Below are positions 1,857-21,582 of a stretch of 64,000 nucleotides of DNA, one piece after another. The stretch spans positions 310,001 through 374,000 of the IMG/VR virus record IMGVR_UViG_3300036770_003657. The stretch is one strand, 5' to 3'. The notes under the pieces are model-generated. The model searched no databases and was not told the DNA's origin. It saw nothing but the letters and a program-made list of their open reading frames with translations. The position numbers were made by a program, and so were the translations under genes. Position 1 is the first letter of the stretch. Each line of letters opens with the position of its first letter.

Positions 1857-1978
1857 ACTTTATTAAAACACACTACCACCGAACTTTTTCACCTAGGGTT
1901 ATTAGTTTGTCTGCTAGGCAGAACATTGACTACGTACCGTCGGGCTTTGACTAGTCTTCAAGTGTGCTTTAATAAAGT
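1857..1978 (-). ncRNA. Long-stem hairpin RNA (family member 1)
   Basis: 18-bp terminal stem ACTTTATTAAAGCACACT/AGTGTGTTTTAATAAAGT with one G:U that only pairs on the minus strand; interior carries TGCCTAGCAGACAAA. Confidence 0.65.
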
Positions 1979-2295: not shown

Positions 2296-2308
2296 TTTTC
2301 TAATAATT

Positions 2309-2902: not shown

Positions 2903-3028
2903 AGAAAATTTTTATTGAATATATCTTTCTTTAGCTAATAAAGATCTTAGCAACCAACTATCCTTCACAACATTTAGTACATTCTCCACAACTTCTTCCT
3001 AAAGTTTCCACGATAATGGGAATAGTTT

Positions 3029-3469: not shown

Positions 3470-4046
3470 TTTTTTTAGAATAGCACAAGTTTGATATTTT
3501 TTGAATCACTTCGTCAAATGTAGGATTGCCAATTAAACGTACACTAAGAATACATCTATAACTATTGTCTAATCTACTAGTAACATTATGGGGAATATCA
3601 ACTCTAGTTATTGTTGGATAGTTATCAATATATGCTCTATCAATAATACTTGGTTTATCTTTCCAGACTACTTTATAAAATTTTGTTCCCCCAGTAGTAG
3701 AAACTGGCAATTTATAATAACTACCATCTAGCCAGTACATATAGGTTTCAGCACACCCTTCTAGAGGGAAAATTATTGAAGTATGTATTGCTCGTTTTTC
3801 TATGTTATCATAATCGACATGACATACATCACTTTCGTAGAAAAAATTTTTTCTTTTAAAGCATAAAAAATTCCATCCTGGAGTTAATCCATAGCTATTC
3901 ATTTCTTCAGCAAAAACTTCTATCAGATCTTTTGAAATTGGTATGTTTTTGATATAGATGTCTTCTGTATCAAATTTACTCATAAAATCCAATGTTTGTT
4001 TTTTGAAATGATCGAAACATTTTAATTTAAAAGAATAATGTAACAT
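3462..4046 (-). CDS. Putative Fe(II)/2OG-oxygenase-like protein
   Basis: CHVD...IPHNV...R motif set. Confidence 0.5.
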   Translation of the reverse strand: MLHYSFKLKCFDHFKKQTLDFMSKFDTEDIYIKNIPISKDLIEVFAEEMNSYGLTPGWNFLCFKRKNFFYESDVCHVDYDNIEKRAIHTSIIFPLEGCAETYMYWLDGSYYKLPVSTTGGTKFYKVVWKDKPSIIDRAYIDNYPTITRVDIPHNVTSRLDNSYRCILSVRLIGNPTFDEVIQKISNLCYSKKND

Positions 4047-4084
4047 AAGTTTATTTATTTTCTGTAGTTAAAAATAAATATTTC

Positions 4085-5053: not shown

Positions 5054-5236
5054 GCCCAACGACCAAAATCACTTAAATATTTCGTTTTAACTTTTTTGAA
5101 AGAATATCCATTTCTTAAATTAACTTTGAAATCAAATTTAATATCATTAATTTTTTTAATTTTTTAATTGTGACAGAAATTGATCAAAATCTGTACAGAA
5201 TCTTGGTTCACCTGAGATTAGAAGCGCTACTTTCAT
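5051..5236 (-). pseudogene. Collapsed remnant of a glycosyltransferase-like gene
   Basis: MKVALLISGEPRFCTDF... stops after 26 codons; another frame gives ...KYLSDFGRWA*. Looks like N- and C-termini joined across a deletion. Confidence 0.4.
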
Positions 5237-5688
5237 TTTTCAAATTCCAAAATAGCCAAAGATCGAAATAATGGATCATTACTATAAATATTTAGTTCTC
5301 CATTTTGATCATATGCAACCAAGTGTTTACCTTGCTTTGCCTGCTCTTCGGCCCATTCGTATACATATTTTTTAATTATACCTGCTGTAACTATTCTGTA
5401 GTATAGATAAGTTTCTAATTTCTTGGTTATAATTATAGCATTACATTTATCAGGTTTAAGGTTTTCTGGTAAGGAACTATTTTCAATCCAATCACAATAA
5501 AAATTTTTACATAAGGTATCTCTTACTGGGTAAATTCCACATCCAACTCTGCCTAAAAACCTACAAGAACCATTAGTTGGACTTATTTCAAAATTAAAAA
5601 CTCTGGCAATTAACCAACCTTCGCAGCATTTACTACATCCGTTACAACTTCTTCCTTTGGTTTCAACATATATAGAAAATTGCTTCAA
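5233..5688 (-). CDS. YkgJ-like Cys-cluster (CxxCxxCC) Zn/Fe-binding protein
   Basis: RSCNGCSKCCEG...CRFL...CGIYPVR..LCKNFYC. Confidence 0.7.
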   Translation of the reverse strand: MKQFSIYVETKGRSCNGCSKCCEGWLIARVFNFEISPTNGSCRFLGRVGCGIYPVRDTLCKNFYCDWIENSSLPENLKPDKCNAIIITKKLETYLYYRIVTAGIIKKYVYEWAEEQAKQGKHLVAYDQNGELNIYSNDPLFRSLAILEFEK

Positions 5689-5909
5689 TCTTTAATATCT
5701 CCTACTAAATGTAATCTCCAATCATTAGAACCATTTATGGTAGTATGTTCTAAAGTAGAATCTATTAAGTATGAAAATCCTACAGATATATGTTCAAACG
5801 GTCCATCTTTAAAAATTATTCCATAGATGTCCCATTCAATTTTAGGTTCTAAAAGGTAATAATCATCTAGTAAAATAATATGATTAATTGATTTTAACTT
5901 TTTTATCAT
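5685..5909 (-). pseudogene. Internally deleted paralog of the 3029-3469 hydroxylase
   Basis: Shares DYY..EPKIEW and DSTL.HT.INGS..WRLHLVGD but lacks the central ~70 aa including HRD. Confidence 0.6.
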
Positions 5910-6580
5910 TTTTTTGAAACTATTGCACAAGTTTGAAAATTTATAGTAAACTTTGGGTTTTTAAATTCTATATGATAATGAGGAAATAAACTAGCTAGGT
6001 ACTTTTTGTTATAAAAGGCTAAAAACATTTTATTATCGATTGGCCTATCTCCTTTTTTATTATCTATCAAATATAGTTTATCATTTGATATAATAGGGTC
6101 ACATGTACCAAAATCTTTAATTCTTTTCCGATAAAAGAAATTAGTTACCTTACTATCTTCTATATCACAGAAACTAAAATATATTTTGTTTTTACAATAG
6201 TTGAATAAATCATCAATTCTATTTTTCATCTCATCTTCTGTGGTATGTGTAAAAACACTATATGCAATAATATTATCAAAGGATTTATTCAATGATAGTT
6301 TTAAATTTTTAATTCCTGTAGGATTATACATTGCATTGTAATCATCAAAATGAAAAAATTCTGCTTTAGGGTACAAATATCTAGCCTGTTCTATAGCTTC
6401 TTTTAAAACATCTATTCCTGTATAAAGACTAATATCATAATCAACCTCTCTTGTTTCTAGAAATGAGCCAATATTACACCCGTAATCTAGTAAAGTCCCT
6501 TGAATAATTTTTTCATCTATACACTTAAAGTAAGAAAAATTTTCTTTTTTATAATTTATAATCATTGTAATTTTACCCAT
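5906..6580 (-). CDS. Class I SAM-dependent methyltransferase
   Basis: LLDYGCNIG motif I, YTGIDV, AYSVFTH. Confidence 0.8.
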   Translation of the reverse strand: MGKITMIINYKKENFSYFKCIDEKIIQGTLLDYGCNIGSFLETREVDYDISLYTGIDVLKEAIEQARYLYPKAEFFHFDDYNAMYNPTGIKNLKLSLNKSFDNIIAYSVFTHTTEDEMKNRIDDLFNYCKNKIYFSFCDIEDSKVTNFFYRKRIKDFGTCDPIISNDKLYLIDNKKGDRPIDNKMFLAFYNKKYLASLFPHYHIEFKNPKFTINFQTCAIVSKK

Positions 6581-6664
6581 TCTTTAATTATTCTCAATCC
6601 TTCTGGATCATGCCATAGTGAATGCTTGTCACTATTTAATACTTTAAATTTAACAAGAGAAATG

Positions 6665-7096
6665 TCAAATTATATATTCGTAATTTATGGTATCTACGTT
6701 TTCACGAAATATATTAGCACCATTTCTTAGATGAAACTTACGGGCCATTTCAGTTTTTGGACTAAGGGTTACAAATCTAGTGACTGTAGGATATAATTTT
6801 GGAATTTCGTCAACTACAGCAAATAATAACTTACTGGCCGCACCCGCACGATAACTCCATATGGTATAAAATATGGCAGTGGTGAGGGTTGTGTCATCTC
6901 TACTTAGATCTTCTACAGTTTGTGGAACAAAATTGTGTAGACTAACGCATATCATAGCCTCTAATTTTTCTTCAACTAGAGCACCTACAAATCTATTACG
7001 ACTAACACGGAAATCTATAGGAATGTCTGGACGTACTGGGTCATCTTTGATATATTCTAACAAAGGGTTATCTGTGTCCTTTATGAGATTTAACAT
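6665..7096 (-). CDS. Conserved phage protein, GNAT-like fold possible
   Basis: IFYTIWSYRAGAASKLL...VTLSPKTEMARKFHLRNGA. Confidence 0.5.
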   Translation of the reverse strand: MLNLIKDTDNPLLEYIKDDPVRPDIPIDFRVSRNRFVGALVEEKLEAMICVSLHNFVPQTVEDLSRDDTTLTTAIFYTIWSYRAGAASKLLFAVVDEIPKLYPTVTRFVTLSPKTEMARKFHLRNGANIFRENVDTINYEYII

Positions 7097-7139
7097 ATAG
7101 CTACTTTATTATATACATATTTATATAATAAATATTTAC

Positions 7140-7664
7140 ATGAATGATTATTACCAAAAAATTAATTGGAATTATGATAAAGAATTACTTCTAAATTTGG
7201 TCACAGAAGTAAATCATATAGGTATGATAAATTTACCTTTTCAATATGTTCGAAAAATAAAAAATACCCTTAAATTGTTCATTCATCCTTTTAGTATTTT
7301 GTATTTTAACATTGAAGAAAATGGCGTAGGAACTATTCATATAGATTATTTGAATAACATTAGTGATTGGGCACTTAATCTTCCTTTAACGGAGAATTTT
7401 GCAACAATGCATTGGTACACGCAAAATAAAAAAGATGTTGAATTTTATAACACCAGTGATAATTTTGCTGCCAGTCCTAGGCTAAATCAGGAAAATGCTA
7501 TTCAAATAGCAAGTTGTCAAATAAGTCAACCCTTAATTGTTAAAATAAATTATTGGCATAATGTAACTAATCAAACAAAAGATTTTACAAAGTTTATAAG
7601 TTTGAGATTTCTTAAAATAACATCAGATGAATTCTTATCAAGACAAAAAATAATTAAATTTTAA
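7140..7664 (+). CDS. Putative Fe(II)/2OG-oxygenase-like protein
   Basis: IHID...WALNLP...WHNV...SLRF. Confidence 0.5.
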   Translation: MNDYYQKINWNYDKELLLNLVTEVNHIGMINLPFQYVRKIKNTLKLFIHPFSILYFNIEENGVGTIHIDYLNNISDWALNLPLTENFATMHWYTQNKKDVEFYNTSDNFAASPRLNQENAIQIASCQISQPLIVKINYWHNVTNQTKDFTKFISLRFLKITSDEFLSRQKIIKF

Positions 7665-7675
7665 TAACTAATTTT

Positions 7676-7751
7676 TGGTGCCGCCTCGTGGGATCGAACC
7701 ACGTTCCTCGGTTCTTCAGACCGGTGCTATGACCACATCAGCTAAAGCGGC
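7676..7751 (-). tRNA. trnF: tRNA-Phe(GAA)
   Basis: Cloverleaf, loop CTGAAGA, CCA; C:A mismatch at top of anticodon stem. Confidence 0.9.
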
Positions 7752-7756
7752 ATATT

Positions 7757-7832
7757 TGGGGTAACCTATGAGGATCGAACTCATACTGTCTCGGTCACGA
7801 CGAGAGGTGCAGGCCACTACACTAAGGTCACC
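7757..7832 (-). tRNA. trnH: tRNA-His(GTG)
   Basis: G-1:C73 identity pair, loop TCGTGAC, CCA. Confidence 0.9.
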
Positions 7833-7838
7833 ATTAAC

Positions 7839-7913
7839 TGGTGCTGATAATAGGATTTGAACCTATGACTTCCATCTTACCAAGATGGCGATCTACCCCT
7901 GATCTATATCAGC
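7839..7913 (-). tRNA. trnT: tRNA-Thr(GGT)
   Basis: CCATC-TTGGTAA-GATGG, CCA. Confidence 0.92.
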
Positions 7914-7984
7914 AAGAAAGTTAGTTGTACAAAAGTATAGGTTTTGATCGAAACTTATCTAGTAAGTATACAAAAGGACTTACT

Positions 7985-8254
7985 ATGAGAGCACAAGACC
8001 TACTAAGAGATTATATAAACATTGTTGAAAAATGGGGCACGCCTACTACAGTCGCACCCAGCGAACGTGGCAAATATAAGGGCAAGAGTAAACAGGAACT
8101 ACAAAAAAGTTACAATTCTCTAAAAGCCAGTGGCCCACATAAAAAAGGATCAACAGAATATGGTCGTATGCGTGAACTAGCATTTGCCATACGTGCTAAA
8201 AGTGGATGGGGCAGTGTAAAGGGTGAAGGTAGTTATGAACAAGAGGAAGAATAA
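7985..8254 (+). CDS. Small basic phage protein (possible virion internal protein)
   Basis: SD AAAGGA before ATG 7985; MRAQDLLRDYINIVEKW... Confidence 0.6.
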   Translation: MRAQDLLRDYINIVEKWGTPTTVAPSERGKYKGKSKQELQKSYNSLKASGPHKKGSTEYGRMRELAFAIRAKSGWGSVKGEGSYEQEEE

Positions 8255-8257
8255 TTC

Positions 8258-8503
8258 TTGGATATAGAATTTATCTGCCTCTCAAAACTTGGTGTAGGAT
8301 CTGTTCTAGTAAGACATACGGATATTATTACTATGGAGCTTACTCCTATGGGATTCACTCGTATTGAATTTGGTTACGGTGAACATCTCATAGTGGAGGA
8401 AACACCTATTCAAATACTAAACAAGATTAGAGCAGCACAAGAACTCAGTGAGCAGTCTGTTGAATCAACAATTAAAGAACCTATTAATAAGGAGTCTAAA
8501 TAA
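8258..8503 (+). CDS. Small protein, FlbD-like fold possible
   Basis: DIITME.....TRIEF..GEHLIVEETPIQIL resembles the FlbD family pattern. Confidence 0.35.
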   Translation: MDIEFICLSKLGVGSVLVRHTDIITMELTPMGFTRIEFGYGEHLIVEETPIQILNKIRAAQELSEQSVESTIKEPINKESK

Positions 8504-9107
8504 TCTCTACACTAATTTTTTCTTTAGTTTTAGTAGGAAACAGTTGATTAGTTACATGATGCAGTCTTCTGCTTCTATCAGGATCACCAAATCCAATTCC
8601 CATTAATAAACTAGGACCGTTTGTCATTCCTAAAATTTGTTGTATCTGTGTTCCATCAAAACAGGCACAACAACCAGTTTTATAACCTAAAATATTACTG
8701 ATTAAATTAGCATAACCTGCCGCTATACCTATGGCCATGTCGCTATCTCTAGTTGAAGTAGCTTTGGAACCATTTTCATAAATATGGTTTTTTATTTTAT
8801 GTCTATCACTGGTTTCTATAGCCTCAAACACAAGTAAAAGATTAGCTAAAGTTTGACTGTTAGTTGTCCACTCTCCATTAGGTAACAAAAATCCTTCAGT
8901 AGTTGCATGTATAGATTCAATAATATTTCTATTTACTACAGCATAAACCTTATAAAAAGCATGATTTTGTTTACTGGGGCAATTAGATACAGCATGTATT
9001 ATAAGTTCTAAATCCTCTTGCGGAATATTTTTAGAAATGTCCCAATTACGCTGACAATGTTGACTTCTTATTATAGCTTTTTCAAGTTCTTGATGAGTAA
9101 TTTGCAT
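8496..9107 (-). CDS. Nitroreductase-family flavoprotein
   Basis: RSQHCQRNWD, CPSKQN, LLMGIGF. Confidence 0.8.
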   Translation of the reverse strand: MQITHQELEKAIIRSQHCQRNWDISKNIPQEDLELIIHAVSNCPSKQNHAFYKVYAVVNRNIIESIHATTEGFLLPNGEWTTNSQTLANLLLVFEAIETSDRHKIKNHIYENGSKATSTRDSDMAIGIAAGYANLISNILGYKTGCCACFDGTQIQQILGMTNGPSLLMGIGFGDPDRSRRLHHVTNQLFPTKTKEKISVEII

Positions 9108-9143
9108 AATATTGCTCCTAGTACATTATTTATACTAGAAATT

Positions 9144-9218
9144 TGGTGCCTCTTCTTGGGAACGATCCAAGGACCCCCACCTTATCAAGATGGTGCTCTA
9201 CCACTGAGCTAAAGAGGC
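9144..9218 (-). tRNA. trnI: tRNA-Ile(GAT)
   Basis: CCATC-TTGATAA-GGTGG, CCA; T-loop ATCGTTC. Confidence 0.88.
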
Positions 9219-9222
9219 ATAT

Positions 9223-9297
9223 TGGATGCGGAGGACGGATTCGAACCGCCGATCTCTAGGTTATGAGCCTAGTGAGTTTCCTCTTCTCTACCCCGCG
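9223..9297 (-). tRNA. trnM: tRNA-Met(CAT), initiator-like
   Basis: C1:A72 mismatch, loop CTCATAA, CCA. Confidence 0.85.
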
Positions 9298-9303
9298 ATT
9301 GTA

Positions 9304-9378
9304 TGGTGGACCGGCGGAGGATCGAACTCCGACTAAAGGCTTGCAAAGCCCCTGTGCTACCATTATCACTACCAGCCC
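9304..9378 (-). tRNA. trnA: tRNA-Ala(TGC)
   Basis: G3:U70, loop TTTGCAA, CCA. Confidence 0.92.
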
Positions 9379-9384
9379 ATTGTT

Positions 9385-9460
9385 TGGCTCCGGTCCAGGG
9401 ATTCGAACCCCGCTTCATGGATTAACAGTCCACCGCCTACACCTAGCTTGCTCGACCGGA
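9385..9460 (-). tRNA. trnN: tRNA-Asn(GTT)
   Basis: GTGGA-CTGTTAA-TCCAT, CCA. Confidence 0.92.
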
Positions 9461-9467
9461 ATATACT

Positions 9468-9559
9468 TGGTGGAAGGAGAGGGATTCGAACCCTCGGAGC
9501 AGGTTACCCCACTCGACAGATTAGCAATCTGCTGCCTTAAGCCTCTCAGCCATCCTTCC
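9468..9559 (-). tRNA. trnS: tRNA-Ser(GCT)
   Basis: Long variable arm, loop TTGCTAA, CCA. Confidence 0.93.
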
Positions 9560-9568
9560 TAATACTAC

Positions 9569-9652
9569 TGGTGCCCTGAGAGGGACTCGAACCCCCACAC
9601 CTTACGGCACTTGCTCCTAAGGCAAGCGTGTCTACCATTTCACCACCAGGGC
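9569..9652 (-). tRNA. trnL: tRNA-Leu(TAG)
   Basis: CTTGC-CTTAGGA-GCAAG, variable arm, CCA. Confidence 0.93.
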
Positions 9653-9659
9653 TACAACT

Positions 9660-9734
9660 TGGAGCAGGATATCGGATTCGAACCGATGACATTCTCGTTG
9701 GCAACGAGACATTCTACCCCTGAATTAATCCTGC
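9660..9734 (-). tRNA. trnG: tRNA-Gly(GCC)
   Basis: TCTCG-TTGCCAA-CGAGA, CCA. Confidence 0.93.
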
Positions 9735-9758
9735 ACTACACTACTTATATCTTGTCTA

Positions 9759-9848
9759 TGGTGGAAGCGGTGAGATTCGAACTCACGGACCGTTACCAGT
9801 CGTCTGTTTTCAAGACAGGTGCATTAAACCAGGCTCTGCCACACTTCC
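9759..9848 (-). tRNA. trnS: tRNA-Ser(TGA)
   Basis: Loop CTTGAAA, long variable arm, CCA. Confidence 0.93.
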
Positions 9849-9853
9849 TTATT

Positions 9854-9929
9854 TGGTAGCAATGGTCAGACTCGAACTGACGATAGGCACCGTATGAAGG
9901 TGCTGCATTAGCCACTATGCTACATTGCT
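9854..9929 (-). tRNA. trnM: tRNA with CAT anticodon (elongator Met or Ile2)
   Basis: GCACC-TTCATAC-GGTGC, paired 1:72, CCA. Confidence 0.85.
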
Positions 9930-9930
9930 G

Positions 9931-11226
9931 TTAATTATGTGATATAAACTTAAGACCTGCTTGAGCGGCTATTGCAGCCCAAGCATCATTATGATCTTCA
10001 TCTACTGAAAAAACTGCCGCCTTAGCATTAGTTTTTTGTAACTGGCTGTTGGCAAACCTAGCCCATTCTCTAGCAATTAATTTCCATACACCTTTATATT
10101 GGCCGCTTGATGCATTGTCCACCATAAGTTCAAGATATGGAGTCTGATCCTCCATATGGAATAGTGGAGTAACTACAAAACTACATTCCCAATTTGGATT
10201 GTCACGCATATTAAAAACATCAGGATCAAGTTCACTAAAACGAGTTTTAGGATCAGTTGTGGCCATTATCATTATATCCTCTCGCCTTATACGAATTGGC
10301 ACATTGGGATATAAACTGTTAAAGGAATTCTTAACAACCTTGGCCATATAGGCTGCGGCTTTTGGAGCCCAAGATCTCATCAATTCTTGTTCCCACTTTA
10401 ACCCTTGTTTTTGATCCATACCAGTTTGTTGAACATCTTCATCTAATTTATTATCAGAATCACTTGGAACTGTTACACCCATTGTGTTAACACGAATCTT
10501 TCCTTGTTCTACCTGATCAATTTGTGCTTGATTACCAAATGATAACGGATCCGTTATTACAAGTTGTGGTCCATATTTTGTTCTACGAAACATAAAATTA
10601 CCACCATTTAGATCTCTTTTATAACCACTTTTATAAAGATATCGTATGATATTGATTGCTTCTATCAATTGCGGATCTTTTATACTATTGCCTTTCTTAT
10701 CTTTATATTTAGGATCAAGTAAAGTTTGAGTTATAAGATAAACTAATTCTGACATTATAATAATACCTGGTCTCCCTACTGTATAGGGATATTGATCTTG
10801 GAGACTATTAAAATCAACATTCAATATTTTACTAAAAACCATAATCAATTCATCTGAGTCGAGGTCTCGCCAGTTACTTAACTTTTCTATGTCTAATTCA
10901 AAATATGGAGCACCTCTTTTAGGCTTTACTATATTGGCATTGTAGACCTGAGGTAGATAAGGATTATCGGTTTGATCCTTTAATGACATCAACTTATTAA
11001 TGTATGCGTAATAACCGTCTAATTTAGGCTTATTTTGATCAAATCTAGATACTTTCTTTGCTGTGCCAATACCCAATTCGCCTTCTGGTTGATCATAAAC
11101 TTTACCAAAATGTCCACTACCTAATTCAGGTTGTGTCTTGGATATTGCTGCCATTCGTTGCTTTTGAGTTGGGCCTTGTGTAACTGGAAGATCCTCACTG
11201 ATAATGTCTGTAATTTTCATAATCAT
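9931..11226 (-). CDS. Protein-kinase-like (Ser/Thr/Tyr or small-molecule) protein with extra C-terminal module
   Basis: Gly-rich loop LGSGHFGKVY, AKK, catalytic-loop-like RDLNGGN, ITDP at the DFG position. Confidence 0.7.
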   Translation of the reverse strand: MIMKITDIISEDLPVTQGPTQKQRMAAISKTQPELGSGHFGKVYDQPEGELGIGTAKKVSRFDQNKPKLDGYYAYINKLMSLKDQTDNPYLPQVYNANIVKPKRGAPYFELDIEKLSNWRDLDSDELIMVFSKILNVDFNSLQDQYPYTVGRPGIIIMSELVYLITQTLLDPKYKDKKGNSIKDPQLIEAINIIRYLYKSGYKRDLNGGNFMFRRTKYGPQLVITDPLSFGNQAQIDQVEQGKIRVNTMGVTVPSDSDNKLDEDVQQTGMDQKQGLKWEQELMRSWAPKAAAYMAKVVKNSFNSLYPNVPIRIRREDIMIMATTDPKTRFSELDPDVFNMRDNPNWECSFVVTPLFHMEDQTPYLELMVDNASSGQYKGVWKLIAREWARFANSQLQKTNAKAAVFSVDEDHNDAWAAIAAQAGLKFISHN

Positions 11227-11240
11227 ATTTAGTTAGGTTT

Positions 11241-11326
11241 ACCATATTGAAACACACTGATTGAACCTTTACCTCTTCCGAGTCCGTTCTTACCGTCAGG
11301 CGTTACACAATGTGCTTCAATATGGT
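11241..11326 (-). ncRNA. Long-stem hairpin RNA (family member 2)
   Basis: 16-bp stem ACCATATTGAAGCACA/TGTGTTTCAATATGGT (G:U on minus strand). Confidence 0.65.
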
Positions 11327-11449
11327 TGCCGGTTACAAAATCCGGCGTTACACTTTCGGAGTAACTGTTCTACCTATCCCGTCACCGACTTCGTTTAAGA
11401 CTCGCCGCCTTTATACACGCTGATGGCCACGTGTTCTGGTATTGCTACC
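11323..11449 (-). ncRNA. CCA-ending structured RNA with anticodon-stem-loop mimic
   Basis: Ends GCCGG-ATTTTGTAA-CCGGC-AACCA; internal GTTAC/GTAAC hairpin; not a cloverleaf. Confidence 0.5.
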
Positions 11450-11514
11450 ATATTTGAGCATACTACTCATCGGCTAGCCGCCATTTGTCTGTTCGGCAAT
11501 ATGCTCAAATATGG
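11448..11514 (-). ncRNA. Long-stem hairpin RNA (family member 3)
   Basis: Perfect 15-bp stem enclosing a core that is repeated at 12851-12889. Confidence 0.75.
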
Positions 11515-11586
11515 CAGGGGTACTCCGACTCGAACGGAGAAATGCGGGATCAAAACCCGGTGTTTTACCAATTAGACTATACCCCA
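11512..11586 (-). tRNA. trnQ: tRNA-Gln(TTG)
   Basis: Loop TTTTGAT, CCA. Confidence 0.92.
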
Positions 11587-11592
11587 ACTGAT

Positions 11593-11667
11593 TGGCGGTC
11601 CCAACGGGAATCGAACCCGTCCCTGCGGCGTGACAAGCCGCTATACTCACCGATATACTATGGAACC
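11593..11667 (-). tRNA. trnD: tRNA-Asp(GTC)
   Basis: GCGGC-TTGTCAC-GCCGC, CCA. Confidence 0.93.
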
Positions 11668-11672
11668 ATATT

Positions 11673-11746
11673 TGGCGTCCCTGCACGGATTCGAACCGCG
11701 ACTAAGAATTTTGGAGATTCACGTGCTACCGTTACACTACAGAGAC
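11673..11746 (-). tRNA. trnW: tRNA-Trp(CCA)
   Basis: Loop CTCCAAA, G73, CCA. Confidence 0.9.
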
Positions 11747-11753
11747 ATTGTTT

Positions 11754-11828
11754 TGGTGCTCTGTGAAGGACTTGAACCCTCATCGCCGGATTACAAAACC
11801 GGAATTCTAGCCTTTGAAATAACAGAGC
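11754..11828 (-). tRNA. trnT: tRNA-Thr(TGT)
   Basis: CCGGT-TTTGTAA-TCCGG (U:U at 31:39), CCA. Confidence 0.88.
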
Positions 11829-11833
11829 GTTGG

Positions 11834-11911
11834 TGGAGTTAGGAGTCGGATTCGAACCGACGGGTTGACAGTTTTGCAGACTGTTGCGTTGGGCCTCTCC
11901 GCCATCCTAAC
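11834..11911 (-). tRNA. trnC: tRNA-Cys(GCA)
   Basis: ACAGT-CTGCAAA-ACTGT, U73, CCA followed by a second CCA. Confidence 0.92.
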
Positions 11912-11914
11912 ATT

Positions 11915-11989
11915 TGGTACGGGCACTCGGGCTCGAACCGAGAACTTACTGGTTAAAAGCCAGTTACTCTACCTTTGAGTTATACCCGC
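11915..11989 (-). tRNA. trnK: tRNA-Lys(TTT)
   Basis: ACTGG-CTTTTAA-CCAGT, CCA. Confidence 0.93.
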
Positions 11990-12041
11990 AAAATAAAAAA
12001 CCCTTGGCAAAATCTATGACTTACCCAAAGGCCATAATTCT

Positions 12042-12116
12042 TGGTACACCCAACGGGAGTCGAACCCGTCTTTCCAGCTTGAAAGGCTAGCGTCCTAACC
12101 GATAGACGATGGGTGC
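12042..12116 (-). tRNA. trnE: tRNA-Glu(TTC)
   Basis: CTAGC-CTTTCAA-GCTGG, CCA. Confidence 0.93.
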
Positions 12117-12122
12117 TTTGTT

Positions 12123-12207
12123 TGGTGGAGAGCCAGGGACTCGAACCCCGTATGCCTGAGGCGTCGGATTTACAGTCCGATGCAGTAACCTGTTCTGCTC
12201 GCTCTCC
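12123..12207 (-). tRNA. trnY: tRNA-Tyr(GTA)
   Basis: TCGGA-CTGTAAA-TCCGA, variable arm, CCA. Confidence 0.93.
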
Positions 12208-12243
12208 GTATGTGTTTATAAATACTCCGAAGAGAACATCCCA

Positions 12244-12732
12244 CTAAATGTTCACATTTATGAATGGGTCTTCGTCCATTAATCCAATTGTTATTGCCTT
12301 TCTAACAGATGTTACATTTGCTACACTATGCAAAACATGCGTATTTAATATATGCCATCTGAAAGGTTCTATTTCTAATTTCATTATCGTTTCTAAATCA
12401 TCTATTGTCGGATGGCTGTATCTAGGACCAATATAAATATCTCTATTCTTGATACGATGCAGCCGTGTTACGACGTTTCCTCCTCTAGAAATAATATAGT
12501 TTAATCCCCAACGTCTGAAATCGCAGTGAGGAGCAACATTAGCTTCCATAACTTGACAGCCCATTCTGTCTTTTATAGGGCTAACATGTTTTACTAGCCA
12601 ATCTATAAGTTGTTCTGAAATGTTATATCTTGAGTAAACTCCATCTTTAAATCCTACTTTATCTGTGTAATAACAATCTACAAGAAGATTGGAGGGTATA
12701 TTAGGTAATTGATCCAAATAAGTAAAAAGCAT
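12244..12732 (-). CDS. Putative Fe(II)/2OG-oxygenase-like protein
   Basis: APHCD...WGLNYI...WHILNTHVLHSV...RKAIT; paralog of 1177-1761. Confidence 0.55.
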   Translation of the reverse strand: MLFTYLDQLPNIPSNLLVDCYYTDKVGFKDGVYSRYNISEQLIDWLVKHVSPIKDRMGCQVMEANVAPHCDFRRWGLNYIISRGGNVVTRLHRIKNRDIYIGPRYSHPTIDDLETIMKLEIEPFRWHILNTHVLHSVANVTSVRKAITIGLMDEDPFINVNI

Positions 12733-12776
12733 AATCTATTTATTTTAATAACAGATAATTTATCTTAAAAAAATTT

Positions 12777-12840
12777 TAACACACTCTAGCAGTTTATCTT
12801 TCTGCCCCATCTTACTAGGTAAGTGTGGACGAGTGTGTGT
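12777..12840 (-). ncRNA. Long-stem hairpin RNA (family member 4)
   Basis: ACACACTC/GAGTGTGT stem; inner GCAG-AAAGATAAA-CTGC and CTTAC-CTAG-TAAG. Confidence 0.5.
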
Positions 12841-12899
12841 AATAAAGCAGACTACTCATCGGCTCGCCGCCATTTGTCTGTTCGGCAATCTGCTTTATT
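12841..12899 (-). ncRNA. Long-stem hairpin RNA (family member 5)
   Basis: 11-bp stem AATAAAGCAGA/TCTGCTTTATT around the 39-nt repeated core. Confidence 0.75.
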
Positions 12900-12900
12900 A

Positions 12901-13018
12901 CTACTACCTTTTTACACATCCTAGTTACCGCCTAGGACTTATCATCCGGTAGTACGCCCTCGTTTGCCACATGTTTTAAGTGCATGGCAGGACCGCGTTC
13001 CCTATACACACTTTGCTA
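12901..13018 (-). ncRNA. Unassigned structured RNA directly after promoter P3
   Basis: Hairpins TGCCA..TGGCA (loop CACTTAAAA) and TCCTAG-GCGGTAA-CTAGGA. Confidence 0.45.
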
Positions 13019-13029
13019 TCTTAAACTGT

Positions 13030-13058
13030 ATTATATACAGTCTCCAGCATATTGTCAA
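13030..13058 (-). promoter_or_regulatory. Consensus sigma70 promoter P3
   Basis: TTGACA-17 nt-TATAAT; palindrome CTGTA-N5-TACAG spans the -10 box. Confidence 0.85.
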
Positions 13059-13088
13059 CTATTGCTTTGTTACTCTTTTACAACATCT

Positions 13089-13122
13089 AAAAAAAACCCC
13101 AAGGTGTTTAGTCCTGGGGTCC
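13089..13122 (-). terminator. Intrinsic terminator of attenuator
   Basis: CCCCAGG-ACTAAACA-CCTTGGGG followed by T8. Confidence 0.85.
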
Positions 13123-13157
13123 TTAAGTTGGATATACTACTATCCTACCGGGACCCC
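13116..13157 (-). promoter_or_regulatory. Antiterminator hairpin of attenuator
   Basis: GGGGTCC (inside leader ORF 3' end) pairs with GGACCCC (5' arm of terminator); inner GGATA/TATCC. Confidence 0.75.
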
Positions 13158-13255
13158 CGACAATCTGTATCATTAGCCTTAATCATTGACCAATAGGCTG
13201 GCATTGAGCCTGACTCATGGCGTTGACTAAAACTAAAATAATACTGGGATTTCAT
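13145..13255 (-). CDS. Attenuator leader peptide, 36 aa
   Basis: MKSQYYFSFSQRHESGSMPAYWSMIKANDTDCRGSR*; AAGGA SD-like upstream; below ORF-track cutoff. Confidence 0.75.
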   Translation of the reverse strand: MKSQYYFSFSQRHESGSMPAYWSMIKANDTDCRGSR

Positions 13256-13292
13256 TTAAACTTTATTTCCTTTGTTACTTACTATGCTTCAC

Positions 13293-13321
13293 ATTATACA
13301 CTTGCTAGTACAAGTTGTCAA
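13293..13321 (-). promoter_or_regulatory. Consensus sigma70 promoter P2
   Basis: TTGACA-17 nt-TATAAT; spacer contains inverted repeat ACTTG-N6-CAAGT. Confidence 0.88.
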
Positions 13322-13354
13322 CAACTTTTGGTGTTGTTTTTCTACTACATCTTG

Positions 13355-13362
13355 TATTTATA
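13355..13362 (-). promoter_or_regulatory. T4-like late promoter
   Basis: TATAAATA. Confidence 0.55.
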
Positions 13363-13383
13363 CAATTGCTTAATTCATATGCT

Positions 13384-13412
13384 ATTATATGGTGATTTCA
13401 TTGACCTGTCAA
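13384..13412 (-). promoter_or_regulatory. Consensus sigma70 promoter P1
   Basis: TTGACA-17 nt-TATAAT. Confidence 0.85.
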
Positions 13413-13708
13413 CTATGTTTGAGCATCCAGAACAGAGCCTCACCTTTTTTCCAAAAACCAAAATACCATTCTTGCCTTGTGTCTCGTTGTAGGAAGAATG
13501 CTTCCACCTTACCGTTGGCTCTATGTACTTTGTTATTCATTTCTTCCCACCAATCTGTTTTGTGTAGGAAGTCTGCGTTGAAATATTCGTGTGTCTTAAT
13601 TACTAGAATATCGGCTGGAGGATTGTTAGCATAAAGATTCTTAAACCTTTCTGCTTCGTAGTAAGGTATATGACCTTCTAACCAATCCTGCCAAGCCAAT
13701 ATTTGCAT
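13409..13708 (-). CDS. Hypothetical protein
   Basis: 99-aa ORF in operon with rbr/DUF3501. Confidence 0.6.
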   Translation of the reverse strand: MQILAWQDWLEGHIPYYEAERFKNLYANNPPADILVIKTHEYFNADFLHKTDWWEEMNNKVHRANGKVEAFFLQRDTRQEWYFGFWKKGEALFWMLKHS

Positions 13709-13715
13709 TCATTAT

Positions 13716-14294
13716 TTAAGCAAAGTCTTTAACTAATTCGTTTCTAACTTCATCTTTAAGTTGAATTTCATAAGGATAAAGATCATGCCCAATCCCTAGG
13801 TATACTTTATTGGCGGAATCCTTAAAATCTATGATTTCACCAGGTTTAAGTTCAAACCTAAGAAAATGAACCGCACTCGTTTTGGAATCTGTGCTACGTT
13901 CGAGATCTTCATCTGCAATTGCATATATACGCTGATGTCCTTGGATTCTTAAAAATACTGTATCTTCAATATTTTTAAGTTGTTCCAATTTCACTTTACG
14001 TAGATCAGGATCCCCGTATTCCAAAGTCATAGTGGCAATAAGATTCATACCGTTTGGTATTAAAGGATTATAAGCATCTAGTTCATCCTTGATACCATTA
14101 GTTGTAAATGTACGCTCAATGAACAACATTTCCTGAACTTGGTACTTTACAGTATCTCTATCTTCAAAAGCCAAAGTACAATTTGGTCCAATTGATACTT
14201 GACGTAGGCGACGATGATCTATAGCACTGCGTCTAAAGTCATCACGAACCTTACTATAATCTTCCAATGTCATTAAATCGTCTTGAGTTAACAT
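13716..14294 (-). CDS. DUF3501-family protein (rubrerythrin-associated)
   Basis: FEDRDTVKYQVQEMLFIER, ELDAYNPLIP, KTSAVHFLRFEL; follows rubrerythrin as in proteobacterial loci. Confidence 0.85.
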   Translation of the reverse strand: MLTQDDLMTLEDYSKVRDDFRRSAIDHRRLRQVSIGPNCTLAFEDRDTVKYQVQEMLFIERTFTTNGIKDELDAYNPLIPNGMNLIATMTLEYGDPDLRKVKLEQLKNIEDTVFLRIQGHQRIYAIADEDLERSTDSKTSAVHFLRFELKPGEIIDFKDSANKVYLGIGHDLYPYEIQLKDEVRNELVKDFA

Positions 14295-14305
14295 ATCTAA
14301 TCCTA

Positions 14306-14740
14306 TTATTGCTCTGCTTTAAATGCGTCAAGAGTTTTCTTGAACTTACCAGCGTGGCTACGTTCTGCCTTGGCCAATGTTTCAAACCAATCAGCAATCT
14401 CGTCAAAACCTTCATCACGAGCATCACGTGCCATACCTGGGTACATATCTGTGTACTCATGTGTTTCACCAGCAATGGCTGATTCAAGTGCTTCAACAAC
14501 TGTTTTAGCGCTCATACCAGTTTCTGGATCACCGCTTCCACCATTGATCAAATATTCCATATGACCGTGTGCATGACCAGTTTCACCTTCTGCTGTATGA
14601 CGGAAGATTGATGCTACATCTGGTGCACCTGCAATGTCTGCCATGTTTGCGAAATACAAGTATCTACGATTTGCTTTACTTTCACCTGTAAACGCATCCT
14701 TAAGATGCTGTTCTGTTTTACTACCTACTAGTTTAGTCAT
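14306..14740 (-). CDS. rbr: Rubrerythrin
   Basis: [41 protein letters not shown] diiron motifs. Confidence 0.92.
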
Positions 14741-14785
14741 TGTTTTCTCCTTGTGTGTATGACGTGTTTTATTGTACATTTATTT

Positions 14786-14815
14786 AATCTATTAATCAAG
14801 CGATTTTAATAGATT
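14786..14815. promoter_or_regulatory. Inverted repeat upstream of rbr (LysR/OxyR-like operator candidate)
   Basis: AATCTATTAA-N10-TTAATAGATT with CTAT/ATAG cores. Confidence 0.45.
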
Positions 14816-14842
14816 TTTTATGGTATTTTTTAATAAGGCTTA

Positions 14843-15655
14843 TTAAATTTTTTTATAAACAGCAATTACAGTATGCCCAATATCAAAGTTTATATTATGA
14901 TCTTTGATATCATATCTATTCTCATCAAGTAAACTACGATGAAAATCTGCTAGGGGTTCTTCGTATATTTCCACTTGTCTTAGGTCAAACAAGTTGGCAA
15001 TATTAGTCAAACATTGTTTGGTAAATCGTGTAACATGATGTGGAGGATAGTTTAGTGCCCAACCTTCTATATTGCCTAAAAAACCGTCTTCGTTTGGCAC
15101 ACTGAGTATGAGTATACCATTAACTTTTAAACAGCGTAGAGCATTGGATATAAAAGATCGTGTGTCATCTACATGTTCTAATACTTGGAATCCACATATT
15201 ACGTCATATAGGCCTTGATGTTCTTGTATGCTTTGTTTTATTACTTTCGGGTTTTGGCTGTAAGGATCTAGCCCAGTATAATCGGCTTCAACCATTTTAC
15301 CAAAGTAACCCTCTCCGCAGCCAATCTCCAGTATATTGTCATCTGATATGATGTATCTTTTGGCAAAGTCAAATTCTGGTTTGACCAATTGATAGTACCA
15401 AGGAAATGCCTGTAGTTGACTATAGAAGTTTGAACCACCCATAACAGGTGGTTTATAAAACCTAAGATCACAATCCATACATCTGTATAATTCTATATCA
15501 GAGGTAATATCTTCTGTGACATCAACTGGTGTATTATCAAACAAGGGATCTGTTTTATAAGCATTATGTATAAAATCACGGCTATACGTTTTATGTATAG
15601 CTGTGTTACTACTATGACATAAAGGACATTTTTTCATCTTTTTCCATATATTCAA
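14843..15655 (-). CDS. Class I SAM methyltransferase with N-terminal Zn-ribbon
   Basis: CPLC...CMDC, ILEIGCGEG, FQVLEHV, HHVTRF. Confidence 0.85.
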   Translation of the reverse strand: MNIWKKMKKCPLCHSSNTAIHKTYSRDFIHNAYKTDPLFDNTPVDVTEDITSDIELYRCMDCDLRFYKPPVMGGSNFYSQLQAFPWYYQLVKPEFDFAKRYIISDDNILEIGCGEGYFGKMVEADYTGLDPYSQNPKVIKQSIQEHQGLYDVICGFQVLEHVDDTRSFISNALRCLKVNGILILSVPNEDGFLGNIEGWALNYPPHHVTRFTKQCLTNIANLFDLRQVEIYEEPLADFHRSLLDENRYDIKDHNINFDIGHTVIAVYKKI

Positions 15656-16121
15656 AAAGGTTATTCCAGACTTCTTGTTTTTTCATTTCTTTAATTTCAT
15701 CGTCATATGGATGACTACCATCGAACCTATAGTGATAACGTAGAGCATCAGCACATACTATGTTCTTCTCTACAATATGTCTAAGATCTTCCCTACCACA
15801 GAGTAATCTTTCTCTACATAAGTCTACATTGTCCTGCATGAGATCAACTCCGTAAACTGTAGATAACGCCTGTTCAAAGGTTGAACCATTCTCCATCTTG
15901 CGGATTAAGACTTCGCCAAGGAACTGTCCATCACCGCAAGTAGGGTCCAGGAAAGTTTTGGTAGTATCAGTAAACACTTCTTCGGGTAATTGTGTTAGTA
16001 TTTCTTGAACAAGAGGAGTCGGGGTAAAGACTTCTCCCGTTGCCTTTACCCTTGCCTGTTCTCGCTCTACACCACTCATGTAATCACGGTCGCGGATGTG
16101 ATTGATTATGTCATTTAACAT
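15612..16121 (-). CDS. N6-adenine DNA methyltransferase-like small subunit
   Basis: RVKATGEVFTP (motif X), FLDPTCGDGQF (motif I), YGVDL; no NPPY. Start overlaps the upstream stop. Confidence 0.75.
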   Translation of the reverse strand: MLNDIINHIRDRDYMSGVEREQARVKATGEVFTPTPLVQEILTQLPEEVFTDTTKTFLDPTCGDGQFLGEVLIRKMENGSTFEQALSTVYGVDLMQDNVDLCRERLLCGREDLRHIVEKNIVCADALRYHYRFDGSHPYDDEIKEMKKQEVWNNLFEYMEKDEKMSFMS

Positions 16122-21512: not shown

Positions 21513-21548
21513 TCTTACCTTATCTGTTCCTTATTGTCTGTAGTTGGG

Positions 21549-21571: not shown

Positions 21572-21582
21572 ATGGAGTCATT

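What the first reader, a model, noticed from the sequence alone, without database searches (positions are those of the whole stretch)
11448..12899. Family of hairpin RNAs among tRNAs: identical 39-nt core inside different terminal stems
Seen: ACTACTCATCGGCT(A/C)GCCGCCATTTGTCTGTTCGGCAAT occurs at 11462-11500 and 12851-12889 (38/39 identical). Each copy is closed by a perfect but different-sequence stem (15 bp and 11 bp), which is natural covariation supporting a conserved RNA structure. Related elements lie at 1857-1978 (shares TGCCnAnCAGACAAA), 12777-12840 (loop AAAGATAAA) and 11241-11326. The elements at 1857, 11241 and 12777 share a CACA(C)T/(A)GTGTG-type stem. G:U pairs place them on the tRNA strand. 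Inference: a multicopy small RNA family co-processed with tRNAs, possibly decoys or sponges for host defence nucleases or RNA-binding proteins. I cannot match it to a known family.
Basis: partly seen in the sequence, partly recalled or inferred. Interest (0 to 1): 0.8.

Follow-up and report, generated by a model that had tools for sequence, protein, structure and literature searches.

The report
Hairpin RNA cassettes in phage tRNA arrays
The two repeats are copies of a conserved, previously uncatalogued small structured RNA; it is one of more than a hundred different RNA "cargoes" that uncultivated phages carry on a shared stem, slotted right behind the CCA ends of their tRNA genes, and what they do is unknown.

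Summary
The 39-nt core occurs twice (11462-11500, 12851-12889), on the tRNA (minus) strand, and each copy is closed by a different stem.

- **Family:** At least 82 distinct relatives exist in viral and metagenome contigs. The fold is strongly supported: 96% of cells paired, 15 of 23 pairs with compensatory changes, and conserved G.U wobbles.
- **Fold:** A 17-19 bp closing helix, a nearly invariant asymmetric internal loop (C-GAACAG(A/U)CAAA opposite AUGA), and a variable upper hairpin.
- **Databases:** Rfam 15, GenBank phages and the literature hold no match. Scanning 185,579 prokaryotic genomes for the canonical arms found one short MAG contig.
- **Superfamily:** This "class A" core is one of at least 106 core classes carried on a shared 18-bp helix (ACCAUAUUGAAGCACAUU / AGUGUGUUUCAAUAUGGU). 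The helix starts exactly in the CCA of the preceding tRNA in 71 of 172 cases and often ends at the next tRNA.
- **Orientation and turnover:** Cores keep a fixed orientation relative to tRNAs (247 of 247 pairs). They are gained, lost or swapped at the arms.
- **Window members:** 11241-11326 and 1857-1978 belong to other core classes. 12780-12838 is a separate conserved companion.

Most likely these are small RNAs co-transcribed with tRNAs and released by tRNA processing. The decoy or sponge idea is untested.

The parts
11448..11514 (-). Class A hairpin cassette, copy 1. 14-bp arms plus AUUGC/GUAGU, a 12+4 nt internal loop and an upper hairpin. Its first three bases are the CCA of tRNA-Gln.
   Evidence: Covariance model R1 scores it 93.1 bits. 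tRNA-Gln lies at 11512-11586.
12839..12901 (-). Class A hairpin cassette, copy 2. Same core with one loop base changed in the upper hairpin. It has 12-bp arms of different sequence and is not preceded by CCA.
   Evidence: R1 scores it 88.9 bits. The same arm type occurs in many metagenome loci.
11241..11326 (-). Hairpin cassette with the canonical superfamily helix (ACCAUAUUGAAGCACAUUG / CAGUGUGUUUCAAUAUGGU) and a different 48-nt core. It lies 14 nt upstream of the 431-aa ORF.
   Evidence: z = -4.5. R1 scores 35.7 bits through the helix only. One homolog, in L213 at 91%.
11327..11447 (-). 'Linker X', a 121-nt conserved non-coding module between the two cassettes. It starts with a GGUA-GCAA-UACC tetraloop hairpin and ends with a stem followed by A-ACCA, which opens the next cassette.
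   Evidence: 97-99% identical in 21 loci. About 123-nt spacing between cassettes recurs in many arrays.
1857..1978 (-). Hairpin cassette with a diverged superfamily helix (ACUUUAUUAAAGCACACUUG...) and an 85-nt core of another class (cluster 'HP2'). It ends 2 nt before tRNA-Gly.
   Evidence: 67% identity over 114 nt to HP2 members in L005, L006, L054, L059 and L076.
12902..13022 (-). Conserved structured leader domain that precedes copy 2 (four helices with conserved loops).
   Evidence: Homologs in 57 loci. RNAalifold on A4 gives 22 of 39 pairs with compensatory changes.
13030..13058 (-). Perfect consensus sigma-70-type promoter (TTGACA-17-TATAAT) that would start the leader / copy 2 transcript.
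   Evidence: 12 of 12 matches. Two more perfect sites lie at 13293-13321 and 13384-13412.
12780..12838 (-). Branched companion hairpin directly after copy 2. A U-run follows at 12767-12773.
   Evidence: Fold (z = -3.0). Conserved in 17 loci. Not matched by R1.
11512..11586 (-). tRNA-Gln(UUG), whose encoded CCA is paired inside cassette copy 1.

Best explanation
The two repeats are genes for a small structured RNA of about 60-65 nt, called 'class A' here. It is one cargo type in a modular hairpin-cassette system of uncultivated phages.

**Shown**
- The RNA lies on the tRNA strand, downstream of strong early-type promoters.
- It folds into a closing helix, a nearly invariant 12+4 nt internal loop, and a variable terminal hairpin.
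- The closing helix belongs to a superfamily consensus of 18 bp. That helix begins with the ACCA end of the preceding tRNA, or of a non-coding 'linker' module with an acceptor-like end. It often stops at or within a few bases of the 5' end of the next tRNA.
- At least 106 unrelated cores sit on this helix, always in the same orientation. They are exchanged between phages at the arms.

**Inferred**
- The array is transcribed as a polycistron.
- The nucleases that mature the flanking tRNAs free each cassette as a discrete RNA. These would be RNase P at the downstream tRNA, and an endonucleolytic cut at or just after CCA followed by 3' trimming upstream. RNase III in the 18-19 bp helix, or RNase E at CCAU/AUU, may take part.
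- The long helix protects the ends of the released RNA.
- The invariant internal loop of class A is then a specific binding site, for a protein most likely, and the RNA acts in trans. The partner and the benefit to the phage are unknown.
For: - **Family and fold.** 12 first relatives give 97.5% of cells paired and 8 pairs with double changes. 82 distinct sequences give 96.2% paired, 15 of 23 pairs and 278 cells with double changes. No shuffle out of 500 reaches the observed value on any of the five measures, and slid controls collapse to 27-49% paired.
- **Wobbles.** U20.G83, G22.U81 and U36.G75 are conserved.
- **Loop invariance without ascertainment by the loop.** In a scan anchored only on the arms, 11 of 18 distinct cores are class A. 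Their loop changes only at positions 12, 13 and 30.
- **Strand and orientation.** 118 cassettes lie on the strand of the nearest tRNA and 16 opposite. All 247 of 247 homologous core pairs have the same orientation relative to tRNAs.
- **Phasing.** 71 of 172 cassettes start inside the CCA (offset -1). Only one (+1) lies at any other offset up to 10. 21 end in G1 of the next tRNA and 29 end 2-10 nt before it.
- **Superfamily helix.** Consensus over 106 class representatives, with U.G at position 17 in 86 of 106.
- **Modularity.** Ile-HP0-Y-HP9-X-HP1-Asp in L008 compares with Ile-HP9-Asp in L142. The middle core is swapped between L008 and L041.
- **Promoters.**
- **Nuclease-related genes in the window.** A 3'-5' exoribonuclease (Rv2179c-like, E = 8e-41). 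A weak T7 gp0.7-like kinase directly downstream of cassette 11241-11326 (phrog_15752, described as regulating RNase III and RNase E, E = 1.3e-7).
Against: - No expression, end-mapping or binding data exist. Processing and stability are inferred only from genomic phasing.
- Copy 2 and its many relatives are not preceded by a CCA, so the CCA junction is not obligatory for class A.
- Most loci were retrieved with patterns taken from the core or the arms. The conservation figures for the pattern positions are therefore partly by construction.
- 16 cassettes appear better paired on the strand opposite the nearest tRNA.
- No candidate partner protein was found next to the cassettes.
Confidence: 0.55

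Rival explanations
1. One reading: the cassettes are decoys or sponges that titrate host defence nucleases or RNA-binding proteins, for example tRNA-targeting effectors. This is a functional sub-case of the best explanation.
For: - High class diversity and rapid gain, loss and swapping of cores between related phages, as is typical for arms-race loci.
- Several other core classes are tRNA-like, with a GGUUCGAAUCC T-loop next to the 3' arm.
- The location is inside tRNA arrays, which are themselves thought to counter tRNA-targeting defences (general knowledge).
Against: - The invariant part of class A has no anticodon-arm or acceptor-like feature. Its terminal hairpin, the only stem-loop that could mimic one, varies freely in length and sequence.
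- No defence or anti-defence gene association was tested or seen.
Confidence: 0.15
2. The cassettes are cis-acting processing or insulator elements. In this reading they are RNase III-type or RNase E-type sites that separate tRNAs, non-coding modules and mRNAs, as the RNase III hairpins do between T7 early genes. The cores would have no trans function.
For: - The helix is 18-19 bp, about the size of an RNase III substrate, followed by an internal loop.
- Exact placement between cistrons.
- CCAU/AUU fits the RNase E preference RN/WUU (from memory).
- A T7 gp0.7-like kinase gene follows cassette 11241-11326, and this order is also seen in L213.
Against: - A processing site does not need 16 nearly invariant loop bases kept across at least 82 variants whose stems co-vary freely.
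- It does not need more than 100 distinct conserved cores.
- Most tRNAs in the same arrays are separated by only 2-9 nt with no hairpin.
Confidence: 0.15
3. They are selfish palindromic DNA elements, like MITEs or REPs, that spread in phage tRNA arrays by means of their terminal inverted repeats. Any RNA structure would be incidental.
For: - Conserved inverted-repeat arms.
- Patchy presence or absence, with breakpoints exactly at the arms.
- Near-identical modules in otherwise different contigs: linker X at 97-99% and an identical class A core.
Against: - Orientation is fixed relative to tRNAs in 247 of 247 pairs.
- Conserved G.U and U.G pairs are mismatches on the other strand.
- Cores show compensatory changes.
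- No direct repeats were noticed in the flanks printed, though I ran no formal test for target-site duplications.
- No transposase was seen next to them in the window.
- Exchange at the arms is explained as well by homologous recombination.
Confidence: 0.06
4. Class A mimics the central part of 5S rRNA (loop C plus the loop E strand), and so binds or competes for 5S-binding ribosomal proteins.
For: The core aligns colinearly with E. coli 5S rRNA nt 40-80, with exact UGCCGAA and GCCGAUG-GUAGU. The score is 18 against 8.9 +/- 1.6 in shuffles, reached by 0 of 5000. A second class (L005 7098-7159) aligns to the same stretch.
Against: - The comparison was chosen post hoc.
- Random 120-nt windows of 16S and 23S rRNA give comparable maximum z-scores across the 104 cores, up to 4.8.
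- The 5S fold is absent, and the Rfam 5S model gives no hit at E <= 10.
- In class A these bases pair differently from their arrangement in 5S.
Confidence: 0.04
5. The invariant asymmetric internal loop is a small-molecule aptamer, acting as an RNA sponge or sensor.
For: The architecture (two helices around a highly conserved asymmetric loop, with a variable distal hairpin) is typical of small aptamers.
Against: - No riboswitch family matches.
- No expression platform or regulated gene follows consistently.
- No ligand is suggested by the gene context.
Confidence: 0.05

Closest known systems
GOLLD and ROOL RNAs (large ornate RNAs of phages and prophages near tRNA islands)
   Same: - Structured non-coding RNAs of unknown function in phage tRNA arrays, on the tRNA strand, found mostly in environmental sequence (10.1101/2024.12.08.627333, read).
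- A GOLLD RNA (214 bits) sits in the same array as two cassettes in L090.
   Different: - Those are single large RNAs of 500-800 nt with one conserved architecture.
- Here the units are small hairpins of 60-200 nt, with a shared helix and many unrelated cores.
- There is no sequence or model match in the window.
Phage T4 stable RNAs 'species 1 and 2' (rnaC, rnaD) in the T4 tRNA cluster (from memory)
   Same: Small non-tRNA RNAs co-transcribed with phage tRNAs and released by the tRNA-processing machinery. Function unknown.
   Different: - No similarity was found in GenBank phages, where only tRNAs matched.
- T4 has two such RNAs. It has no modular family on a common helix phased on CCA.
RNase III processing hairpins between phage T7 early genes (from memory)
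   Same: A repeated family of roughly 20-bp irregular hairpins with an internal loop, placed between cistrons of a polycistronic phage transcript. A T7 gp0.7-like kinase candidate lies next to one cassette.
   Different: T7 sites carry no large, diverse, conserved cores and are not joined to tRNA CCA ends. Cleavage is untested here.
Y RNAs (Ro60/Rsr-binding), including bacterial YrlA with a tRNA-like module (PMC4201824, listed; details from memory)
   Same: A conserved closing helix formed by the 5' and 3' ends, with a variable and sometimes tRNA-like distal module.
   Different: - No Rfam Y RNA or YrlA match.
- No Rsr/TROVE gene among the window ORFs scanned.
- The helix sequence is unrelated.
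Palindromic mobile DNA repeats (MITEs, REP/BIME) and integron attC sites
   Same: Inverted-repeat arms around a variable centre. Cassette-like gain and loss.
   Different: - Strand-specific wobble pairs, fixed orientation, and conserved co-varying cores.
- No integrase or transposase was seen.
- No attC R-box sequences.

Membership tests
Any Rfam 15 family | Score at or above the family's gathering threshold | tested here: not met
   Only tRNAs are found in the window. At E <= 10 over 11150-13400 and E <= 1 over 1-16000 there is nothing credible on the hairpins. In 14 cassette-rich loci, the listed matches are tRNAs plus one tRNA-Sec call, one GOLLD and one group I intron (24 lower-scoring matches were not listed).
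Hammerhead ribozyme | CUGAUGA and GAAA cores around a three-helix junction | tested here: not met
   The RNA has CCGAUGA and CGAAC, but only two helices. Only 19 nt lie between the two motifs, and there is an extra C next to the helix (read). No Rfam hammerhead hit.
Sarcin-ricin / loop E (bulged-G) motif or kink-turn | AGUA opposite GAA with a bulged G; or a 3-nt bulge followed by tandem sheared G.A pairs next to a canonical helix | tested here: not met
   The AGUA bases (34-37) are engaged in pairs that co-vary as Watson-Crick or wobble pairs: G4.U36 also occurs as G-C and A-U, and C5-G35 and U3-A37 are invariant. The strand opposite GAUGA carries 12 unpaired bases, not a k-turn geometry.
5S rRNA | Three-way junction fold with helix I; match to the 5S covariance model | tested here: not met
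   No 5S hit at E <= 10, and the fold differs.
5S rRNA (mimicry, not membership) | Sequence resemblance to loop C and loop E strands beyond chance | tested here: inconclusive
   z of about 5.8 against shuffles. Control rRNA windows reach a z of up to 4.8 over the set of cores.
tRNA / tRNA-like | Cloverleaf recognised by ARAGORN or the tRNA covariance model | tested here: not met
   Class A, 11241-11326, 1857-1978 and linker X are not called. Some other core classes elsewhere do carry T-loop-like arms.
GOLLD / ROOL | Match to RF02032 / the ROOL model | tested here: not met
   No match in the window. GOLLD is present in a related array, L090.
RNase III processing site (T7 type) | About 20 bp of helix between cistrons | tested here: met
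   17-19 bp in class A and an 18-bp consensus in the superfamily. Intercistronic position.
RNase III processing site (T7 type) | Staggered cleavage by RNase III | not testable with these tools
   Needs in vitro cleavage, or rnc+ versus rnc- end mapping.
MITE / REP-like mobile DNA | Both orientations, target-site duplication, cognate transposase | tested here: not met
   Orientation is fixed in 247 of 247 pairs. Wobble pairs are strand-specific. No direct repeats were noticed in the flanks printed, but I ran no formal test. No transposase domain among the window ORFs scanned.
DNA inversion system (shufflon-like) | Segments between inverted repeats found in both orientations | tested here: not met
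   0 of 247 homologous core pairs are inverted relative to the tRNA strand.
Y RNA / YrlA | Ro/Rsr-binding helix, model match, neighbouring rsr gene | tested here: not met
   No Rfam hit. No TROVE-domain ORF in the 64-kb window. The rest of the roughly 400-kb genome was not available.

The most novel reading that the evidence does not exclude
Uncultivated phages carry, inside their tRNA arrays, an exchangeable library of more than 100 distinct structured RNA 'cargoes'. All are displayed on one common 18-bp helix that is welded to tRNA CCA ends, so the host's tRNA-maturation enzymes release them. In effect this would be an RNA-only accessory genome: decoys, sponges, mimics of tRNA or rRNA pieces, or aptamers that act on host defence or translation. 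Class A would be its most widespread member.
Probability: 0.25. Interest if true: 0.9.

Novelty: new variant of a known kind. Interest (0 to 1): 0.72.

Why it matters
Phage tRNA islands are already known to hold enigmatic RNAs such as GOLLD, ROOL and the T4 stable RNAs, and none of these has a known function. This finding adds a large, well-supported and apparently uncatalogued layer.

- There is a common "display" helix phased on the tRNA CCA end.
- It carries many different conserved cores, which phages shuffle.

Three things follow.
- It gives a concrete, testable route by which phages could express many small RNAs without dedicated promoters or terminators.
- It supplies a ready set of short, covariation-backed RNA folds for structural and binding studies. 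Class A has 16 nearly invariant loop bases.
- It may explain part of the unexplained spacing in phage tRNA arrays.

If the cargoes act on host defence or on the translation apparatus, this would be a new class of RNA-based phage accessory function.

Tried and rejected
- **Rfam.** Gathering and permissive thresholds, on the window and on 14 related loci, gave no family for the hairpins.
- **GenBank phages.** Near mode found nothing and distant mode found only tRNA matches.
- **Full-text literature.** Searching for the arm and core sequences gave only unrelated primer hits. The supplement of the IMG/VR structured-RNA survey is not held, so I cannot exclude that the motif is among its 10,006 unnamed candidates.
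- **Known motifs.** Hammerhead, sarcin-ricin/loop E and k-turn readings of CCGAUGAGUAGU / CCGAAC were rejected on helix count and on the co-varying pairs.
- **5S rRNA mimicry.** The alignment is attractive, but the controls do not separate it from chance over many cores. I keep it only as a lead. A 23S-like alignment of one core (L139) has the same status.
- **DNA inversion or shufflon between the inverted arms.** Rejected, with 0 of 247 inverted.
- **Alternative register,** in which the arms pair across a tRNA or linker rather than across the core. Rejected for class A, because compensatory changes link the two arms of the same hairpin.
- **Trans target of the loop within the window.** No excess of complementary or similar sites (6 found, 9 expected).
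- **Bacterial and archaeal genomes.** One hit only, on a 5-kb MAG contig.
- **Neighbouring proteins as partners.** Nothing RNA-binding was found next to the cassettes.
Full report
**Where the window comes from.** The 21-mer from the core matches two stretches (L001, L002) of IMGVR_UViG_3300036770_003657, a 399,796-bp viral contig, and their flanks are identical to the window. The window carries 21 tRNA genes, all on the minus strand. Neighbouring genes include heme oxygenase, a bilin reductase, Hsp70, ribonucleotide reductase and an Rv2179c-like 3'-5' exoribonuclease. No GenBank phage resembles the region apart from its tRNAs.

**The observation.**
- The 39-nt core occurs exactly twice, and none is expected by chance.
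- Read on the tRNA strand, copy 1 (11448-11514) is CCAUAUUUGAGCAU-AUUGC-C-GAACAGACAAA-UGGC-GGCUA-GCCG-AUGA-GUAGU-AUGCUCAAAUAUGG.
- Copy 2 (12839-12901) has the same core on GUAAUAAAGCAG/CUGCUUUAUUAC arms.
- Both fold much better than shuffles.
- The first CCA of copy 1 is the encoded 3' end of tRNA-Gln.

**Class A is a real RNA family.**
- Pattern scans of IMG/VR and of JGI/ENA metagenomes returned many relatives.
- A covariance model built from 12 of them recovered 86 matches, 82 of them distinct. There is a clean gap between members (at least 55 bits) and everything else (36 bits or less).
- On that alignment 96.2% of cells are paired. 15 of 23 pairs show changes on both sides, in 278 cells. 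No shuffle out of 500 reaches the observed value on any of the five measures. Sliding the partners by 1-3 columns drops pairing to 27-49%.
- The upper helix switches between GG/CC, UG/CA, CC/GG and CG/CG.
- Three wobble pairs are conserved. On the other strand they would be A.C mismatches, so the functional strand is the tRNA strand.
- Most relatives were found through the loop sequence. I therefore repeated the search with a pattern anchored only on the arms and the two closing pairs. 11 of the 18 distinct cores found were class A. Their 16 loop bases changed only at position 12 (once), position 13 (A or U) and position 30 (once).
- Many contigs carry two class A copies, as the window does.

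**The superfamily.**
- The model also hit, at about 30 bits, hairpins that share only the helix, including 11241-11326 in the window.
A script found 190 arm-paired hairpins.
- Their cores fall into 106 sequence clusters.
- Over one representative per cluster, the helix consensus is 5'-ACCAUAUUGAAGCACAUU / AGUGUGUUUCAAUAUGGU-3'. Positions outside my search pattern are also conserved: A-U at position 1, C-G at position 2, and A-U, U.G and U-A at positions 16-18, with U.G in 86 of 106.
- 118 hairpins pair better on the strand of the nearest tRNA, against 16 on the other.
- All 247 homologous core pairs have the same orientation relative to tRNAs. This excludes inversion between the arms and argues against a DNA palindrome without an RNA role.
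- In 71 of 172 cases the hairpin begins inside the CCA of the upstream tRNA. Only one lies at any other offset up to 10 nt. 21 end in the first G of the next tRNA and 29 end 2-10 nt before it. Upstream tRNAs are of many kinds; downstream, tRNA-Ala and tRNA-Asp are frequent.
- Where cassettes follow each other, they are separated by modules of about 123 nt belonging to a few families. One of these families ("linker X") includes window 11327-11447. These modules end in a helix followed by N-CCA (in linker X one extra A intervenes), which opens the next cassette.
- Related arrays differ by whole modules, with breakpoints at the arms. L008 has Ile-A-Y-HP9-X-B-Asp, L142 has Ile-HP9-Asp, and L041 has another core in the middle position.
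- Some cores are tRNA-like, with a T-loop next to the 3' arm.
- In one array a GOLLD RNA lies beside two cassettes.
- The canonical hairpin is essentially absent from 185,579 prokaryotic species genomes, where one short MAG contig was the only hit.

- 11241-11326 has the canonical helix and its own core, with one homolog in L213.
- 1857-1978 has a diverged helix and a core of cluster HP2, and ends 2 nt before tRNA-Gly.
- 12780-12838 is a separate branched hairpin followed by a U-run, conserved in 17 loci after copy-2-type hairpins.
- Copy 2 is preceded by a 121-nt leader domain (12902-13022), conserved in 57 loci. In the joint leader-plus-hairpin alignment (A4), 22 of 39 predicted pairs show compensatory changes, and the leader helices are among them.
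- The leader starts just downstream of a perfect TTGACA-17-TATAAT promoter.
- In a few loci the same leader is followed by a different cassette.

**How it most likely works.**
- Shown: the fold, the strand, the promoters, the exact junctions with tRNA ends, the common helix, the many cores, and their exchange.
- Inferred: the arrays are transcribed as polycistrons. RNase P cutting at the next tRNA, and the 3' maturation of the previous tRNA, release each cassette. The long helix shields both ends, so the RNAs accumulate.
- The cut after CCA could come from RNase E, because CCAU/AUU fits its RN/WUU preference (from memory). It could also come from RNase III, because the helix is 18-19 bp.
- The window encodes a 3'-5' exoribonuclease. 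A weak T7 gp0.7-like kinase, a family described as modulating RNase III and RNase E, lies directly after cassette 11241-11326.
- The nearly invariant 12+4 nt loop of class A, held between two helices whose sequences drift freely, looks like a specific binding surface. I consider a protein partner most likely, but nothing here identifies it.

**Rivals.**
- Pure processing sites would not need invariant loops or 106 conserved cores.
- Selfish DNA palindromes are contradicted by the fixed orientation, the strand-specific wobbles and the covariation.
- The decoy or sponge idea is compatible with the diversity and turnover, and with the tRNA-like cores of other classes. It is untested, and class A itself does not resemble a tRNA part.
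- The colinear resemblance of the class A core to E. coli 5S rRNA nt 40-80 is striking (UGCCGAA... GCCGAUG-GUAGU). It does not clearly exceed what control rRNA windows give across the core set, and the 5S fold is absent. I keep it as a lead.
- An aptamer reading cannot be excluded.

**Novelty.** Nothing in Rfam 15, in GenBank phages or in the searchable literature corresponds to the class A RNA or to the common helix. It may sit unnamed among published bulk predictions that I could not read. The kind of object, a structured RNA of unknown role in a phage tRNA island, is known (GOLLD, ROOL, the T4 stable RNAs). The modular cassette design on a CCA-phased helix is, as far as I can tell, new.

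Noticed in passing
window 1979-2262 (minus strand): GC-rich non-coding stretch upstream of cassette 1857-1978. It is conserved in 42 fetched loci (up to 92% identity over 285 nt). This includes a stretch downstream of the GOLLD RNA in L090 (shared GGACAGGGUAACAACUC...). No Rfam match. It is probably another structured RNA.
   Followed up: partly
L090:1381-1845: A GOLLD RNA (RF02032, 214 bits) with an embedded tRNA, in the same array as two hairpin cassettes (L090 401-625 and 792-925).
   Followed up: partly
window 9931-11226 (minus strand): A 431-aa ORF that starts 14 nt after cassette 11241-11326. Residues 35-244 weakly match phrog_15752, the T7 gp0.7-like protein kinase family, described as regulating RNase III and RNase E (E = 1.3e-7). 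There is no Pfam hit. Its C-terminal 170 aa are about 80% identical in 11 other loci, and the cassette-then-ORF order recurs in L213.
   Followed up: partly
window 33712-34242 (minus strand): Phage-encoded Rv2179c-like 3'-5' exoribonuclease of the DEDD / RNase T type (Pfam E = 8e-41). It is a candidate for 3' trimming of the tRNAs and cassettes.
   Followed up: no
window 29687-30908, 31772-33649, 40651-41046, 24407-25282: Auxiliary genes: ferredoxin-dependent bilin reductase, heme oxygenase, Hsp70, NifU-like protein and a Gram-negative-type porin. The pigment genes hint at a cyanobacterial or other phototroph-associated host.
   Followed up: no
window 13293-13321 and 13384-13412 (minus strand); small ORF 13145-13255: Two further perfect 12/12 sigma-70 consensus promoters. 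One drives a 36-codon ORF that ends in a strong hairpin plus U-run, just upstream of the leader / class A unit. A similarly placed small ORF and terminator occur in L004.
   Followed up: no
L004, about 6 nt after tRNA-Tyr (945-1028, minus strand): A 25-nt copy of the 5' end of tRNA-Glu is followed by an ORF-bearing insert of about 800 nt, and then by a complete tRNA-Glu. It looks like an insertion (homing-endonuclease-type or intron-like) with partial duplication of the tRNA. In the window a 162-aa ORF (12244-12732) is instead inserted before tRNA-Tyr.
   Followed up: no
window 12902-13022 and homologs (A4): One conserved loop of the leader domain reads CACUNUAAACA. From memory, this loosely recalls boxA antitermination sequences of rRNA operons. 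Not tested.
   Followed up: no
window 21751-21958: A run of 9-nt periodic CAAGGN repeats (collagen-like Gly-X-Y coding) inside ORF 21544-22281.
   Followed up: no
window 45210-46101: Tandem 216-nt and 231-nt repeats (87-90% identical) inside a 4109-aa ORF (44502-56831).
   Followed up: no
L139:172-325: A 128-nt cassette core aligns, with many gaps, to E. coli 23S rRNA nt 1635-1766. The score is 36 against 24.6 +/- 2.2 in shuffles, with a shuffle maximum of 34. Possible rRNA-fragment likeness, unconfirmed.
   Followed up: partly
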